IMG/VR virus record: IMGVR_UViG_3300023184_004198 | Span: 148,615 to 212,614 of that record | Strand: one strand, 5' to 3' | DNA: 64,000 nucleotides | Shown here: positions 3,187 to 39,702 of the stretch, piece after piece | How positions within the stretch are numbered: position 1 is the stretch's first letter | Layout of the letters: the number at the start of each line of letters is the position of its first letter | Made by a program: the position numbers and the translations under genes | The notes under the pieces: generated by a model | Seen by the model: the letters and a program-made list of their open reading frames with translations, nothing else | What the model was told of the DNA's origin: nothing | Databases searched by the model: none

Positions 3187-3675
3187 ATGTCAATATCAGC
3201 AACACCAATTCCCACGCTAACATTAGATGAAGTTAATGAGTTGACCACTAGTATAACCAGTGGTATAGGAACCGACACTATCACCTACAGTCCAATCTGG
3301 AGCACAACAGGCACAGTGGTACCAGGTTATGGTGCTGCCATTGGTAATGGTGGAACTGGATACACCTACACAACCAATACAACCGGTCCTTGGATTGCCA
3401 CTGGTAGTAGCCCTGGTACTTTAAGTGTCGAACAAAGCGGTACCATTGATCTGCGAGGCGAAAACCCTGACATCAAGATCAACGGCAAAAGCATGGTGGC
3501 CTGGATGGAAAAGGTAGAGGAACGACTAAACATCCTCACACCTAATCCTGAGCTGGAAAAAGAATGGGACGATTTGCGCAGACTGGGTGAACGCTATAGA
3601 GCATTGGAAAAGAAGTGTAAGGAAAAAGCCCAGATGTGGGAAGCCTTGAAAAAAGTACAACCTAAACAACCATGA
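3187..3675 (+). CDS. Hypothetical protein (Thr/Gly-rich N-terminus, coiled-coil C-terminus)
   Basis: ORF 3055..3675; start chosen at MSISATP. Confidence 0.65.
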   Translation: MSISATPIPTLTLDEVNELTTSITSGIGTDTITYSPIWSTTGTVVPGYGAAIGNGGTGYTYTTNTTGPWIATGSSPGTLSVEQSGTIDLRGENPDIKINGKSMVAWMEKVEERLNILTPNPELEKEWDDLRRLGERYRALEKKCKEKAQMWEALKKVQPKQP

Positions 3676-4460
3676 TACCCAAGCAAATGACACCCAAACA
3701 ACGCATCAAACACATCTCCAAATGGATCCGAGACTATGCCCGCAAGGCCAAGGTAGATACTTTGGTAGTAGGCATTTCGGGCGGTATTGATTCATCAGTT
3801 GTCAGTGCCTTGTGTGCAGAAACTGGCCTAAAAACTGTTGTGGTACAAATGCCTATTCGGCAGAATCGCAAATTGGACAATCTAAGTTCAGCACAAGCAG
3901 GCTGGCTGTTGGAGCACTATCCCAACAACGTCACGCACATGAGCATGGATCTAACTCCAGTGTTCACTGCATTTGAGAAAAAAGTTTCTCCTTTTGGAGA
4001 CAGTGAATTAGCGTTTGCTAATAGCAGAGCCAGATTGCGCATGATGACCCTGTATCAAATTGCACAAAGTCATGGTGGTATTGTGGTGGGCACAGGCAAC
4101 CGAGTGGAAGACTTTGGCGTGGGATTCTTTACCAAGTATGGTGATGGCGGTGTGGATATTTCCCCCATTGGCGACTGCATGAAAACTGAAGTGTGGGACC
4201 TGGGCCGCGAACTGGGCCTGCTGAAAGAAATCATTGATGCACCACCCACAGACGGCTTGTGGGCTGATGGTCGCAACGACGAAGATCAGTTAGGCATGAC
4301 TTATCCTGAACTGGAAAAGGCCATGTTGCAAGACACTTACTCAGGCATTCGCGAGTATGCCACTGCGCCAGAAAAGAAGTTACTCAAACGTTATCGTGAG
4401 ATACGTGCAAGAAATCTGCACAAGATGACACCTATTCCTGTTTGCACAATACCTCATTAA
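3672..4460 (+). CDS. nadE: NH3-dependent NAD+ synthetase
   Basis: GISGGIDSS PP-loop, N.RARLRM, GTGN, GFFTKYGDG, PT.GLW...DEDQLG. Confidence 0.95.
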   Translation: MIPKQMTPKQRIKHISKWIRDYARKAKVDTLVVGISGGIDSSVVSALCAETGLKTVVVQMPIRQNRKLDNLSSAQAGWLLEHYPNNVTHMSMDLTPVFTAFEKKVSPFGDSELAFANSRARLRMMTLYQIAQSHGGIVVGTGNRVEDFGVGFFTKYGDGGVDISPIGDCMKTEVWDLGRELGLLKEIIDAPPTDGLWADGRNDEDQLGMTYPELEKAMLQDTYSGIREYATAPEKKLLKRYREIRARNLHKMTPIPVCTIPH

Positions 4461-4537
4461 CTACAATGTTAATGACAAAAACACACCATTTTGACAGTTT
4501 TTTGACCGGCCTAGTGCCAAATAAAATAAGTAAAAGT

Positions 4538-4845
4538 GGTGGTAGAACAACACATTGCAATCAAATAGGATCTTCTACTGCTGATTGGTATCTTGTCCAA
4601 TTGAAAAAAACAAGTACCCGTAGCACTGGCAGAGGTTTGTCCAAGCCAACATCAGTGTTCGAAAGAGACTCTCGGAAAGTCTCTTCGTTGACAACTAGAA
4701 TTGGACAGGGTCATTTCTCAGGACGCGACCTTGTCCCAAACGAGTATGCCAAGGAGGCCCGAGGTCTATCTATGCTCATCTCAATCCCTAATCTGTCAAC
4801 GTGATTTACTCGGGTAACCGCGTACGGCCACGTATTGGCTTCTAA
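4538..4845 (+). ncRNA. Putative highly structured non-coding RNA / 5' leader of unknown family
   Basis: At least 7 complementary helices in a ~395-nt intergenic gap of an otherwise gene-dense genome (see findings). Confidence 0.55.
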
Positions 4846-4855
4846 AGGAAATCTA

Positions 4856-5431
4856 ATGAAATTGAATGTTAATCGACCCAATGCTCTAGCAACTTGGGCA
4901 GGTAGAATTATCAAAACTGTGGCTCTGTTTGCAGTGGCATTTACAGTATGGTCAGTGTGTCAATCACGCATGGAAGACCTAAGACAGAATCAAAACAATT
5001 GGGACCAGTCACATGTGAGTGCCGCAGAACGACTGCGCCAGTTGAACTGCTTGACCCAAAACATCTACTGGGAGGCAGCCTCAGAACCATTTGAGGGCAA
5101 AGTAGCAGTGGCGCAGGTCACGTTAAATAGAGTGGAATCAGGTAGATTTGCACCCACAGTATGCGGTGTGGTTTACCAGAAGAATGTGTTTTACGAAAAG
5201 GTAGTTTGCCAATTCAGCTGGTTGTGTGAGAGCACACACAAAACACGCCCAGTTTATCAGCCCATGTGGCAAGAGAGCGAACTAGTGGCCAAGAAAGTGT
5301 TGTTGGAAAACTTCCGATTGCCCAGCATGAAAAATGCGTTATACTATCACGCTGACTACGTAAACCCCAACTGGCGCAAGCCAAAAATTGACCAAATTGG
5401 TCGTCACATCTTTTATGGAGAACGTTCATGA
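4856..5431 (+). CDS. Cell wall hydrolase, SleB/Hydrolase_2 family, with N-terminal TM anchor
   Basis: CLTQNIYWEA..EP.EGKVAVAQVTLNRV, CQFSW, YYHADYVNPNW, IGRHIFY. Confidence 0.9.
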   Translation: MKLNVNRPNALATWAGRIIKTVALFAVAFTVWSVCQSRMEDLRQNQNNWDQSHVSAAERLRQLNCLTQNIYWEAASEPFEGKVAVAQVTLNRVESGRFAPTVCGVVYQKNVFYEKVVCQFSWLCESTHKTRPVYQPMWQESELVAKKVLLENFRLPSMKNALYYHADYVNPNWRKPKIDQIGRHIFYGERS

Positions 5432-5739
5432 ACAACTGGCCCTTTAATCTGCAAACTATCCGTGATTTTTTGAACAACCATTTGCACAAAATTTCGGCAG
5501 ACACCCTGGGCTGGTTGGCAGCCATTGTGTTGCATTGTGCCACTGTGCCTACATTGCTGGCACTAATGACTGGACTTTCAGATCGAGTGCCCAGTTTGGA
5601 TGTGGTGGCATTTCTTTGGGCAGGACTGGTCATGCTGTTCCTGCGAGCCATTGTGTTAAAAGACACCCTAAACATCATCACAATTGGGGTGGGTTTTATA
5701 GTGCAAGCCGGGCTCATGGCCTTGATCCTGTTTAGGTAA
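5428..5739 (+). CDS. 3-TM membrane protein
   Basis: Three hydrophobic segments; coupled to the hydrolase gene. Confidence 0.7.
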   Translation: MNNWPFNLQTIRDFLNNHLHKISADTLGWLAAIVLHCATVPTLLALMTGLSDRVPSLDVVAFLWAGLVMLFLRAIVLKDTLNIITIGVGFIVQAGLMALILFR

Positions 5740-5752
5740 TACTTCAGTAGTA

Positions 5753-5781
5753 TTGACCGGAAATTGCGATCATGCTATAAT
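5753..5781 (+). promoter_or_regulatory. Sigma70-type promoter
   Basis: TTGACC-N17-TATAAT with extended TG. Confidence 0.8.
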
Positions 5782-5812
5782 ACAGCATGATTAGCAACTC
5801 TGGAGTACTGCA

Positions 5813-7423: not shown

Positions 7424-8419
7424 ATGGCCGCAGAATTAACTATCAAATATGTTGTAGACTCTATTGAAGGCAATTCATTGAGTACCACTGTCACTGGACC
7501 GGAACATGGTTGGGTAGAATATTGCAATCAACGAGGACAACTTGTTTATGCTGATGCGGTCAGTGAAGAGTTTTATAAAAAATGCCACCAACAAGTCATT
7601 GAACTCATTACCAAACATGCCATAGAAGATAACAAAAAAAATCTTGGATTTATAAATCACATAAGCAACATACTAGTCAATGATGATTTTGTATTTCCCA
7701 TGTTCGGATCAGTGCCCAACGGCGGCAGTGAACTTGAAATTACCACGGGGGTTACAAGATTAATTGCCAGCATAATGAATGGTCGTACCGCTCGAGAATT
7801 AAAGACTGTGGCATTTACACCTAAAGGACAATCAGCAACGCAATTAGAAAATTTAAAACCTTTGACCAGTACTGCTAATTTTGAAAAAATATACAATCTT
7901 GCAGATATTGATTACGAAATCAGCATGTCGGACTCCCCAGCTGGCGATATGAGTGAGTTTCGATTTGATCGAAGTGTGCTGAAATATTCAATCTATGACA
8001 AAAAAGATCAGGCACTGCCACATACTCAAATAGGAGCAAACGTTTCAAATTTTTGGAGTAGACATATTAAAAAAGATAAAATTCAATTGAACATAAGATG
8101 TACTCCTGAAGTAGAAAAATTAATTCAACCCAGTAAAATTTTTAACTGGAATGTAGTGCATGAAAAACACGAAGAATGGCAATGGAGTTATGGAAGAATT
8201 TTGGGTGCATATCGAAAAACAGAAGTACCTTTGTCCTTTGATGAGTCTCAAATTCATCTCTGGTTGTACGATGTGTCTGAACCTGTGTACTTGGAATTGT
8301 TATTGCCTTGGGTCACTGGACAATATACTTGTTGCCATACCAAAAATAAAAAAGCATTGTTTTTTGACACTTCCAGTGATGTGACCAGTATGCAAATTGT
8401 TGGAGACTGGGTCAAATAA
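7424..8419 (+). CDS. Hypothetical protein (AT-rich)
   Basis: 331-aa ORF, AAGGA RBS. Confidence 0.75.
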
Positions 8420-39267: not shown

Positions 39268-39702
39268 ATGGCAGAAGAACAAAAACCAGAAAAGAAAGAC
39301 GAAGACTGGATGCAGAAAAAATGGCGTCCAGCCATGGGATGGATGTACATGTTGGTATGTACCCTGGACATGGCAGTATTCCCTGTGCTGTGGTCAGTGT
39401 TGCAGATGTTTCAACACACTACCATCACTCAATGGCAACCACTGACCTTGCAAGGCGCAGGACTATTCCACTTGGCCATGGGTGCTGTGCTAGGTATTGC
39501 TGCCTTTGGTCGCACACAAGAAAAGATTGCAGGCGCTGCAGTCAATCCTGCCCCCACAGCATCTGGTGTACCACTACCAGCACCTGCTCCGGTGGTAGCA
39601 TCAGCACCTCCACCTGCTCCACCAGTGGACACACCCCCAGCAGTTACCACAGGCTTTGGCGGAAAGAAAGCGCCACCTGAACCTGCTTTCCCAGAAATCT
39701 AA
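39268..39702 (+). CDS. Holin (3TM / GTA-release holin-like)
   Basis: W...WRPAMGW.Y...MGAVLGI.A.GRT.EK; in the lysis region. Confidence 0.7.
   Translation: MAEEQKPEKKDEDWMQKKWRPAMGWMYMLVCTLDMAVFPVLWSVLQMFQHTTITQWQPLTLQGAGLFHLAMGAVLGIAAFGRTQEKIAGAAVNPAPTASGVPLPAPAPVVASAPPPAPPVDTPPAVTTGFGGKKAPPEPAFPEI

What the first reader, a model, noticed from the sequence alone, without database searches (positions are those of the whole stretch)
4538..4845. Large multi-helix structured RNA upstream of the SleB hydrolase
The longest non-coding gap is dense with helices: GGTGGTAGAA/TTCTACTGCT (4538-47/4573-82) with a possible pseudoknot CAATCA/TGATTG (4558-63/4582-87); AGCACTGG/TCAGTGTT (4622-29/4652-59); AAGAGACT/AGTCTCTT (4663-70/4678-85); long-range CGTTGACA/TGTCAACG (4686-93/4794-4801) enclosing GGACAGGGTC/GACCTTGTCC (4703-12/4727-36) and GAGTAT/ATGCTC (4742-47/4772-77); outer TACCCG/CGGGTA (4615-20/4811-16); and a small hairpin just before the RBS. 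TCTTGTCCAATT (4591-4602) can pair with AATTGGACAGGG (4699-4710), which is mutually exclusive with the 4703 helix and therefore switch-like. The many G-U pairs point to RNA-level selection. I recognise no tRNA, tmRNA, RNase P or intron hallmarks. It may be a new phage ncRNA, ribozyme or riboswitch controlling a wall hydrolase.
Basis: partly seen in the sequence, partly recalled or inferred. Interest (0 to 1): 0.78.

Follow-up and report, generated by a model that had tools for sequence, protein, structure and literature searches.

The report
Structured RNA leader before phage lysin
The long gap before the phage's cell-wall hydrolase gene encodes a conserved, intricately folded RNA leader of a family absent from Rfam, always found in front of a lysin-plus-holin-like gene pair, which probably controls when these lake phages make their lysis proteins.

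Summary
Six are supported by covariation in relatives, three are not, and one is inconclusive.

The 395-nt gap (4461-4855) holds a phage promoter-like site (TAAGTA, 4527-4532) followed by a ~317-nt 5' leader of sleB. Its ~190-nt core (4654-4858) belongs to an RNA family with at least 78 distinct members in viral and freshwater metagenome contigs.

- Every member sits directly upstream of a SleB-type endolysin gene on the same strand. That gene is usually coupled to a 3-TM holin-like ORF.
- Covariation is strong: 85.8% of cells are paired, against 30-43% in slid controls.
- The 3' end forms an H-type pseudoknot, enclosed by an anti-SD/SD helix.
- The leader is more conserved (89-93% nt) than the flanking genes (77-88%).
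- No Rfam family matches.
- Close relatives lacking the leader have TAAGTA 10 nt before the ATG, which implies leaderless mRNA.
- Four lake metatranscriptomes each hold an exact contig covering only 4546-4792.

Best reading: a cis-acting translational control leader for the lysis cassette, with an unknown effector. The class (riboswitch, protein operator or ribozyme) is unresolved.

The parts
4476..4506 (+). Conserved upstream box CAAAAACACACCATTTTGACAGTTTTTTGAC, probably a promoter-upstream element.
   Evidence: It is invariant in the 8-sequence clade alignment, while 4507-4525 varies. A similar CAAAAC..CACCATTTTG box lies upstream of TAAGTA in relatives that lack the leader. Its function is inferred.
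4527..4532 (+). TAAGTA, a -10-like promoter hexamer. The predicted transcription start is about 4539.
   Evidence: TAAGTA occurs only 3 times on the + strand of the 64-kb window (4527, 7395, 39144), and all three are intergenic and upstream of + strand ORFs. It is present upstream of the motif in nearly all members, at 20-157 nt from P1. In relatives without the leader it lies 10 nt before the sleB ATG. RNA contigs start at 4546-4549.
4538..4582 (+). D1: 5'-terminal stem-loop (GGUGGUAGAA / UUCUACUGCU).
   Evidence: The pairing is shown. Equivalent stems with different sequences occur in other clades: GAGUAGA/UCUACUC, GUGUAGC/GCUACAC, GUGGU/ACCAC and CGCGGA/UCCGCG. D1 occurs alone in the short leaders of L035, L039 and L041.
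4587..4619 (+). Predicted hairpin GGUAUCUUGU / ACAAGUACC. It is specific to this clade and is untested.
   Evidence: It appears in the MFE and centroid folds. The only variation is one-sided (U-G to C-G at 4591).
4621..4660 (+). P0 hairpin with the conserved loop GUUUGUCCAA.
   Evidence: Compensatory changes CACUG/CAGUG to CACCA/UGGUG are seen within the clade. The same hairpin and loop occur in the L027, L188 and L231 clades.
4663..4685 (+). P1 hairpin (AAGAGAC...GUCUCUU) with the conserved loop UCGG.
   Evidence: It is helix 1: 94.2% of cells paired and 5 of 9 pairs with changes on both sides.
4686..4801 (+). Junction domain closed by Pc (CGUUGACA 4686-93 / UGUCAACG 4794-4801). It contains the invariant UUGACAAcUAG, P2 (4703-4736), the invariant GAGUAUGCCAAGG (4742-4754), the P3 hairpin AGGCC-CGA-GGUCU (4755-4767) and the possible P3a (4742-47/4772-77).
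   Evidence: In one search, Pc is 94.9% paired with G-C 29, G-U 27 and A-U 16 at one pair. All 9 pairs of P2 change on both sides. P3 is 91.5% paired, with a G-U pair in 66 of 73 sequences. P3a is inconclusive.
4803..4849 (+). 3' module, made of five parts. First, the P4-equivalent region (4803-4817). Second, the conserved CCG (4818-4820). Third, the pre-RBS hairpin P5 (GCCA 4827-30 / UGGC 4836-39). Fourth, pseudoknot stem S1, which pairs into the P5 loop; in this clade GUAC 4822-25 / GUAU 4832-35 is proposed. Fifth, the SD AAGGA (4845-4849).
   Evidence: In 31 non-window-clade members, S1 is 100% paired with C-G 19 versus G-C 12 and U-A 29 versus C-G 2. All 5 pairs of P5 change on both sides. 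The anti-SD CUCC / SD GGAG helix is 94.6% paired without covariation. In the window's own clade the register differs, and S1 there is my reading of the sequence.
4654..4858 (+). Extent of the covariance-model match, i.e. the core family motif.
   Evidence: Model R1 scores 150.8 bits, E 9e-45, and this is the only match in the 64-kb window.
4546..4792 (.). Stretch recovered as a discrete exact contig from four lake metatranscriptome runs.
   Evidence: In one search the contigs are 239-247 nt with 0 mismatches at depth 3-18, and no exact contig lies on nadE or sleB. Contigs carry no strand information.
4856..5431 (+). sleB: Hydrolase_2 / SleB-type endolysin with an N-terminal TM segment.
   Evidence: Pfam PF07486 at 1e-24. 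PHROG endolysin at 1.9e-20. The TM segment is shown.
5428..5739 (+). 103-aa ORF with three hydrophobic segments (holin-like). Its start overlaps the sleB stop (ATGA).
   Evidence: The translation is. The same arrangement (offset -4, 99-109 aa, 3 TM) is found in nearly all family members. The holin function is inferred, since no family matched.

Best explanation
The region is the roughly 317-nt 5' leader of a phage lysis cassette, consisting of a SleB-type endolysin gene plus a translationally coupled 3-TM holin-like gene. It is transcribed from a phage-type TAAGTA promoter, with the transcription start near 4539.

Its 3' two-thirds (4654-4858) is a member of an RNA family that matches nothing in Rfam. 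The parts, in order, are:
- the P1 hairpin with a conserved UCGG loop;
- a long-range helix Pc closing a junction with many invariant unpaired bases, P2 and P3;
- a small hairpin region;
- an H-type pseudoknot whose flanks (anti-SD CUCC / SD GGAG) enclose the ribosome-binding site.

Most likely mechanism: the leader acts in cis on translation. The pseudoknot and anti-SD helix hold the SD closed. An effector recognised by the conserved junction, either a small molecule or a phage or host protein, shifts the fold so that the ribosome can load. One candidate shift is the invariant CCG (4818-4820) docking on the P1 loop CGG instead of pairing with the SD. The holin-like gene would follow by translational coupling. 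Untranslated mRNA would be degraded, leaving the structured leader as a stable remnant.

Shown: the family, its fold, its invariable link to sleB, its higher conservation than the flanking genes, and its presence in RNA libraries. Inferred: the promoter and transcription start, SD occlusion as the output, the existence and nature of an effector, and the CCG/CGG switch.
For: Conservation. The gap is 88.7-92.3% identical to seven relatives whose SleB proteins are only 75-79% identical. The leader is 89-93% identical at the nucleotide level, against 77-88% for nadE and sleB.

Family and synteny.
- Pattern scans of viral and metagenome contigs gave 85 distinct cores. Every one with enough downstream DNA has a SleB ORF starting 132-186 nt after the core, except 3 chance hits inside coding DNA.
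- A second, independent pattern gave 5 more members, all with sleB downstream.
- The CM finds one copy in the window, and none in the 64 other SleB loci of the 80 searched.

Fold.
- 85.8% of cells are paired, against 30-43% when partners are slid.
- 431 cells have double changes, against 53-94 in slid controls.
- 0 of 500 shuffles reach the observed score.
- Abundant G-U pairs fix the strand as +.

3' module. S1 and P5 both covary and are interleaved, and the anti-SD/SD helix is 94.6% paired. L247 and L254 lack both the UCGG loop and the CCG block.

Promoter and leader insertion. Relatives have TAAGTA-AAACTACC-ATG with no SD. The window has the same promoter followed by the leader and an SD.

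Expression. Four metatranscriptomes hold exact contigs of 4546-4792 only. RNA runs hold at most 0.14 of the stretch's words, against up to 0.91 in DNA runs.

Lysis cassette.
Against: - No ligand, protein partner or conformational switch has been demonstrated.
- The anti-SD/SD helix and the CCG/CGG contact involve invariant bases, so covariation cannot test them. The joint loss in L247 and L254 is a single evolutionary event.
- In the window itself the anti-SD is weakened (AACCG instead of CUCCG or AUCCG), and the pseudoknot register differs from the other clades.
- The RNA contigs end near 4790, before the Pc 3' strand and the SD. This would also fit a separate short RNA.
- The contigs carry no strand, and assembly ends are imprecise.
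- No terminator-like site is present.
- The host is unknown.
Confidence: 0.6

Rival explanations
1. It is an independent stable non-coding RNA of about 250 nt, either a trans-acting RNA or a self-cleaving or self-processing ribozyme. It would be made from the TAAGTA promoter and end near 4790-4800. The sleB mRNA would arise only by read-through or by cleavage.
For: Metatranscriptome contigs cover only 4546-4792 in four runs, with depth up to 18, and no exact contig covers the SD or the coding region. There are many invariant unpaired nucleotides in a multi-helix junction, as in ribozymes.
Against: The 3' module up to the SD is part of the conserved, covarying family, and the distance to the start codon is tightly constrained at 132-186 nt. 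The motif is never found away from sleB. No terminator-like site is present. No known ribozyme family matches. Another strain's contig in run X8 runs from 4728 through the SD to 4875. A structured leader outliving its degraded mRNA explains the same contigs.
Confidence: 0.15
2. It is a constitutive structural leader that does not switch. It would stabilise the lysis mRNA (5' stem, compact fold) and supply an SD-led initiation site in place of the leaderless start used by relatives.
For: Relatives express sleB from the same promoter without any leader. The 5'-terminal stem D1 starts at the predicted transcription start, and D1 alone forms a short leader in L035, L039 and L041. No alternative pairing is proven.
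Against: Stabilising stems do not need about 35 invariant unpaired nucleotides, a junction conserved across SleB proteins as low as 32-38% identical, or an SD enclosed by a pseudoknot and anti-SD helix. The leader is under stronger constraint than the proteins it flanks.
Confidence: 0.2
3. It is a DNA-level element, such as a replication origin, packaging site or array of protein-binding sites, and not an RNA.
For: The region has inverted repeats and low GC at its 5' end (0.37-0.41). The upstream box and TAAGTA are probably DNA signals.
Against: Helices are maintained through G-U pairs that would be C-A on the other strand or in DNA. Examples are the P3 G-U in 66 of 73 sequences and the Pc G-U in 27. 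Covariation preserves pairing rather than sequence. The stretch is found in RNA libraries without its flanks.
Confidence: 0.02
4. It is a decayed or unrecognised small protein-coding gene, or the complementarity is due to chance.
For: A 120-aa TTG ORF (4442-4804) spans the region. The single-sequence z-score is only about -2.
Against: The ORF has no Pfam match. Relatives carry 1-nt indels and variable-length P2 inserts that would break any frame. Variation clusters in helix arms and loops, not at third codon positions. Covariation statistics exclude chance.
Confidence: 0.01

Closest known systems
c-di-AMP riboswitch (ydaO/yuaA, Rfam RF00379). From my own knowledge, it controls cell-wall hydrolase genes such as rpfA in Actinobacteria.
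   Same: It is a large structured 5' leader placed in front of peptidoglycan-hydrolase genes. It is a precedent for RNA-level control of wall hydrolases.
   Different: There is no match to RF00379 or any other Rfam model, even at E up to 10 on the region and E up to 0.5 on 12 diverse members. The pseudo-two-fold architecture of ydaO is not seen. The present family is known only from phage and metagenome contigs and is tied to a lysis cassette.
SD-sequestering pseudoknot riboswitches (preQ1-II/III, SAM-II/V, fluoride); from my own knowledge.
   Same: An H-type pseudoknot lies next to or includes the ribosome-binding site, and the presumed output is translational.
   Different: Here the pseudoknot is a 3' module downstream of a separate junction domain of about 140 nt. 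There is no sequence or CM similarity to those families, and no ligand is known.
Phage T4 lysozyme (gene e) mRNA hairpin, and the T4 gene 32 leader pseudoknot with RegA-type operators; from my own knowledge.
   Same: These are cases of translational control of a phage gene, including the endolysin, by mRNA secondary structure or a leader pseudoknot. Timing is set by which transcript or protein is present.
   Different: The T4 e hairpin is a simple stem that is bypassed by a late promoter inside it. Here the promoter lies upstream of a conserved multi-domain fold of about 317 nt with invariant junction bases. No repressor or activator protein has been identified.
Large phage-associated structured RNAs (GOLLD, ROOL), and the more than 10,000 candidate structured RNAs of IMG/VR (Fremin et al. 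2023, PMC10690425).
   Same: These are structured RNAs found by comparative analysis in phage and metagenome sequence.
   Different: GOLLD and ROOL are in Rfam and do not match. They are much larger and are not fixed 5' leaders of one gene. The main text of the Fremin catalogue mentions no hydrolase- or lysin-associated motif. Its supplementary tables were not available, so prior listing there cannot be excluded.

Membership tests
Any Rfam 15 family (4227 models) | A covariance-model match at or near the family's gathering score. | tested here: not met
   There are 0 matches at gathering over the whole window. Only three chance-level matches (E 1.4-4.3, 15-17 bits against gathering scores of 42-55) fall in 4350-4950. 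There are 0 matches at E up to 0.5 in 12 diverse family members.
Riboswitch (general class) | A conserved structured domain with covariation-supported helices and conserved unpaired junction bases. | tested here: met
   See: 85.8% of cells paired, 25 of 44 pairs with changes on both sides, and invariant junction blocks.
Riboswitch (general class) | A consistent position in the 5' leader of the regulated gene, on the same strand. | tested here: met
   All real members lie 132-186 nt (core start to start codon) upstream of sleB. The promoter-like TAAGTA lies upstream.
Riboswitch (general class) | An expression platform with mutually exclusive pairings that expose or hide the SD or a terminator. 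| tested here: inconclusive
   The anti-SD/SD helix is 94.6% paired but invariant, so there is no covariation. The candidate competing CCG/CGG contact is also invariant. There is no terminator.
Riboswitch (general class) | Direct, selective binding of a small-molecule or ion ligand. | not testable with these tools
   This needs in-line probing, ITC or a reporter assay.
c-di-AMP riboswitch (ydaO, RF00379) | A match to the family covariance model or architecture. | tested here: not met
   It does not appear.
Known self-cleaving ribozyme families (hammerhead, twister, twister-sister, pistol, hatchet, HDV-like, glmS) | A match to the family model. | tested here: not met
   These are Rfam families, and searches gave no match.
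Self-cleaving ribozyme (any, including new) | Site-specific self-cleavage of the transcript. | not testable with these tools
   RNA contig ends near 4790 are compatible with this but not diagnostic.
Transcription attenuator with intrinsic terminator | A GC-rich hairpin followed by a U-tract before the gene. | tested here: not met
   There is no + strand terminator-like site in 4000-5500.
tRNA / tmRNA | ARAGORN detection. | tested here: not met
   0 genes in the window.
Protein-coding gene | A conserved open reading frame, or a family match. | tested here: not met
   The 120-aa ORF has no Pfam match. Frame-breaking indels occur in relatives.

The most novel reading that the evidence does not exclude
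This is a new riboswitch class carried only by phages. Its conserved junction would bind a small molecule that reports the state of the infected cell, such as a nucleotide second messenger, a cell-wall precursor or a nucleotide-pool metabolite. Binding would open the SD-sequestering pseudoknot, so that the phage times translation of its endolysin and holin, and therefore lysis, by sensing a metabolite.
Probability: 0.3. Interest if true: 0.9.

Novelty: new variant of a known kind. Interest (0 to 1): 0.72.

Why it matters
Phage lysis timing is classically explained by holin protein clocks and by transcriptional cascades. A large, strongly constrained RNA fold placed in front of an endolysin and holin-like pair would add an RNA-level checkpoint to lysis. 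The fold is conserved across phages whose SleB proteins have diverged to 32-38% identity. If a metabolite is the effector, this would be a phage-borne riboswitch governing the decision to lyse.

The family is also a well-supported new candidate for riboswitch, ribozyme or RNA-protein studies:
- about 78 distinct sequences;
- covariation in six helices plus a pseudoknot;
- evidence of expression in natural lake communities;
- natural controls, since sister phages express the same gene from the same promoter without the leader.

Tried and rejected
- Rfam gave nothing at gathering score or at permissive E-values, on the window and on 12 diverse members.
- tRNA/tmRNA scan: none. Terminator and sigma-70 promoter scans: nothing in the gap.
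- blastn against cultured phages matched only nadE. tblastn with SleB found only distant (<42%) endolysins in cultured phages, so there is no cultured relative and the host is unknown.
- The viral scan with core block 1 alone gave 39 loci. 16-17 of them had no SleB and no CM match, so they are chance hits.
- Three metagenome hits (L209, L212, L234) lie inside coding DNA and are chance hits.
- The scan of 185,579 species-representative genomes gave 7 hits, and none matched the CM. The motif was therefore not found in bacterial genomes or prophages there.
- RNAalifold on the raw MAFFT alignment gave a poor structure because variable helices were out of register. This was solved by L-INS-i plus CM realignment.
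- The P3a helix (GAGUAU/AUGCUC) showed duplex energies only slightly better than shuffles (mean z -0.58), so it is left as inconclusive.
- A mutual-information scan for extra tertiary pairs was dominated by clade effects. Only the S1 pseudoknot pair stood out.
- Literature: no paper links sleB with a riboswitch or RNA motif. The Fremin 2023 catalogue has no relevant mention, and its supplements are not held.
- SleB tree: the leader label needs at least 4 changes on the quick tree, but well-supported branches force only 1. Repeated gain or loss is therefore suggested, not shown.

Full report
**What is there.** The window is part of a 212.6-kb IMG/VR viral contig. The finding lies in the 395-nt gap between nadE (3672-4460, Pfam NAD_synthase 2.5e-49) and a Hydrolase_2/SleB gene (ATG 4856, stop 5431, PF07486 1e-24).

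Single-sequence folding is only marginally better than shuffles. For 4461-4856 the z-score is -1.98 on the + strand and -1.30 on the - strand. For 4539-4858 it is -2.35. Energy alone would therefore not have settled the matter.

**Conservation.** The gap is 88.7-92.3% identical over 386-394 nt in seven related viral contigs whose SleB proteins are only 75-79% identical to the window's. Measured at the nucleotide level, the leader is 89-93% identical, against 78-88% for nadE, 77-84% for sleB and 82-92% for the next ORF. The element follows sleB even where nadE is not the upstream neighbour (L005-L007). Most nadE-sleB relatives have a gap of only 83-161 nt.

**A family.** More distant copies share an invariant core.
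- An exact-pattern scan of viral contigs with core block 1 returned 39 loci.
- A two-block pattern on metagenome contigs returned 79 loci.
- After de-duplication there were 85 distinct cores. Every one with enough downstream DNA has a SleB ORF on the same strand, except three chance hits inside coding DNA.
- The start codon lies 132-186 nt after core block 1 and is always preceded by an SD.
- SleB proteins as distant as 32-38% identity still carry the motif.
- A covariance model (R1: 193 positions, 44 pairs) finds exactly one copy in the window (4654-4858, 150.8 bits). It finds none in the 64 other SleB loci of the 80 searched, and none in the 17 core-1-only loci.
- It finds 76 full-length copies, 73 of them distinct.
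- An independent scan with core block 2 added five more, all followed by sleB.
- A scan of species-representative bacterial and archaeal genomes gave only chance hits.
- No Rfam family matches the window or 12 diverse members. There is no tRNA or tmRNA.

**Structure.** On the CM alignment, 85.8% of cells form standard pairs, against 30-43% when partners are slid by 1-3 columns. There are 431 cells with changes on both sides, against 53-94 in slid controls. The covariation score is 0.340, against at most 0.087. No shuffle of 500 reaches the observed values. By helix:
- P1 (4663-4685): 5 of 9 pairs covary.
- P2 (4703-4736): all 9 pairs covary.
- Pc (4686-93/4794-4801): one pair reads G-C 29, G-U 27, A-U 16, with a single A-C.
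- P3 (AGGCC-CGA-GGUCU, 4755-4767) is nearly invariant and keeps a G-U pair in 66 of 73 sequences.
- P4 and P5 also covary.

The many G-U pairs would be C-A on the other strand, so the RNA is read from the + strand.

Long unpaired blocks are invariant or nearly so. These are UCGUUGACAAmUrG, GAGUAUGsCAArG, the P1 loop UCGG, and CCG after P4.

P3a (4742-47/4772-77) has plausible counterparts in most clades, but it is not statistically distinguishable from shuffles.

**3' module.** In 31 members outside the window's clade, two stems are interleaved. One is a four-pair stem S1 (GCUG/CAGU). The other is the pre-RBS hairpin P5. Their order along the sequence is S1 5' arm, P5 5' arm, S1 3' arm, P5 3' arm, which is an H-type pseudoknot.
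- S1 is paired in 100% of cells. Two of its pairs show compensatory changes: C-G 19 versus G-C 12, and U-A 29 versus C-G 2.
- All five P5 pairs covary.
- Immediately outside, CUCC pairs with the SD GGAG in 94.6% of cells. Both sides are invariant, so this helix is compatible with the data but not proven.
- The CC of the anti-SD belongs to the invariant CCG, which is complementary to the invariant CGG of the P1 loop. The only members that lack the UCGG loop (L247, L254) also lack the CCG block. This suggests, weakly, a competing tertiary contact.
- In the window's own clade the register differs. My reading is GUAC 4822-25 with GUAU 4832-35 and P5 GCCA/UGGC. The window's anti-SD is weakened to AACCG.

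**Promoter and modular 5' end.**
- TAAGTA occurs only three times on the window's + strand (about 16 would be expected from length). All three are intergenic and upstream of + strand ORFs.
- Nearly all family members have TAAGTA upstream, from 20 nt before P1 in minimal leaders to 157 nt.
- Relatives that lack the RNA have ...GAG-TAAGTA-AAACTACC-ATG with no SD. This implies a leaderless sleB mRNA from the same promoter. They share the upstream CAAAAC..CACCATTTTG box with the window (4476-4506).
- The extra 5' part in the window consists of D1 (4538-4582), a clade-specific hairpin (4587-4619), and P0 (4621-4660).
- The D1 stem is replaced by different complementary sequences in other clades, and D1 occurs alone in the short leaders of L035, L039 and L041.
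- P0 has a conserved GUUUGUCCAA loop and shows compensatory changes within the clade.

**Expression.** RNA libraries hold at most 0.14 of the sampled words of 4300-5800, whereas DNA libraries hold up to 0.91. I laid four lake metatranscriptomes from different studies on the stretch. Each gave one exact contig (0 mismatches, 239-247 nt, depth 3-18) spanning only 4546/4548/4549 to 4786/4790/4792. No exact contig lay on nadE or sleB.

The 5' ends fit a start just after TAAGTA. The 3' ends fall just before the Pc 3' strand.

Three caveats apply. Contigs carry no strand, their ends are imprecise, and depth is an assembler value. A contig of another strain runs from 4728 to 4875, so read-through into sleB exists.

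**Gene context.** SleB matches PHROG endolysin families and has an N-terminal hydrophobic segment. The next ORF (5428-5739) overlaps the sleB stop (ATGA) and has three hydrophobic segments. The same pair, with offset -4 and 99-109 aa, is found in almost all members. The leader therefore precedes what looks like a two-gene lysis cassette. The holin role is inferred.

**Interpretation.** The evidence establishes a conserved, structured, + strand RNA that forms the 5' leader of sleB and belongs to a family absent from Rfam.

The most likely function is cis-acting control of translation of the lysis genes, through an SD enclosed by a pseudoknot and anti-SD helix. The conserved junction would serve as the recognition site for an unknown effector. 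The abundant leader-only RNA would be what survives when the untranslated message is degraded.

The rivals are:
- a separate stable RNA or ribozyme, which the contig ends allow;
- a constitutive stabilising leader;
- a DNA element or a hidden gene, both of which the data largely exclude.

On a quick SleB tree the leader-bearing clades are interleaved with leaderless ones. The window clade is sister to a leaderless clade, and the D1-plus-core clade is sister to a D1-only clade. Well-supported branches do not force more than one origin.

**Novelty.** No Rfam match and no paper found links sleB to an RNA motif. I rate it a new variant of a known kind, namely a structured cis-regulatory leader. 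If a metabolite effector exists, the upside is real.

Noticed in passing
window 4527, 7395, 39144 (+ strand); L009-L048 upstream of sleB: TAAGTA is strongly under-represented (3 on the + strand in 64 kb). Each copy is intergenic and upstream of a + strand ORF: sleB leader, ORF 7424-8419 and ORF 39268-39702. In relatives it lies 10 nt before the sleB ATG with no SD, which suggests a phage-specific promoter and leaderless mRNAs.
   Followed up: partly
window 5428-5739 (+): A 103-aa ORF with three hydrophobic segments whose ATG overlaps the sleB stop codon (ATGA). It is holin-like, has no PHROG or Pfam match, and is conserved next to sleB across the family.
   Followed up: partly
window 4454-4475: Perfect 8-bp inverted repeat TCATTAAC / GTTAATGA straddling the nadE stop codon, conserved in relatives. 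A similar (A/T)TTAATGG-AAAAA sequence lies about 55-60 nt upstream of TAAGTA in other clades. It may be an operator or part of the promoter.
   Followed up: no
window 4593-4600, 4637-4644 and 4792-4799: TTGTCCAA occurs twice, in the linker hairpin and in the P0 loop. It resembles the Pc 3' strand (CTGTCAAC), and all three could pair with the invariant UUGACAA (4688-4694). It is a possible competitor for Pc during folding. Untested.
   Followed up: no
L035, L039, L041 (about 130 nt upstream of sleB): A different, shorter sleB leader: TAAGTA followed by a D1-like domain only (GGTGCAGA...TCTGCACC), then an SD. This shows that the 5' domain and the core are separable modules.
   Followed up: partly
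window 3672-4460 (+): A phage-encoded NH3-dependent NAD+ synthetase (nadE). Its nearest DNA matches are in Pelagibacter phage HTVC008M and T4-like cyanophages, so it is an auxiliary metabolic gene in a large freshwater phage of unknown host.
   Followed up: no
A6 columns 47 and 98 (window about 4700 and 4739): Two unpaired junction positions co-vary as A/A (34 sequences), U/G (33) and C/G (5). This could be a tertiary pair or only clade structure.
   Followed up: no
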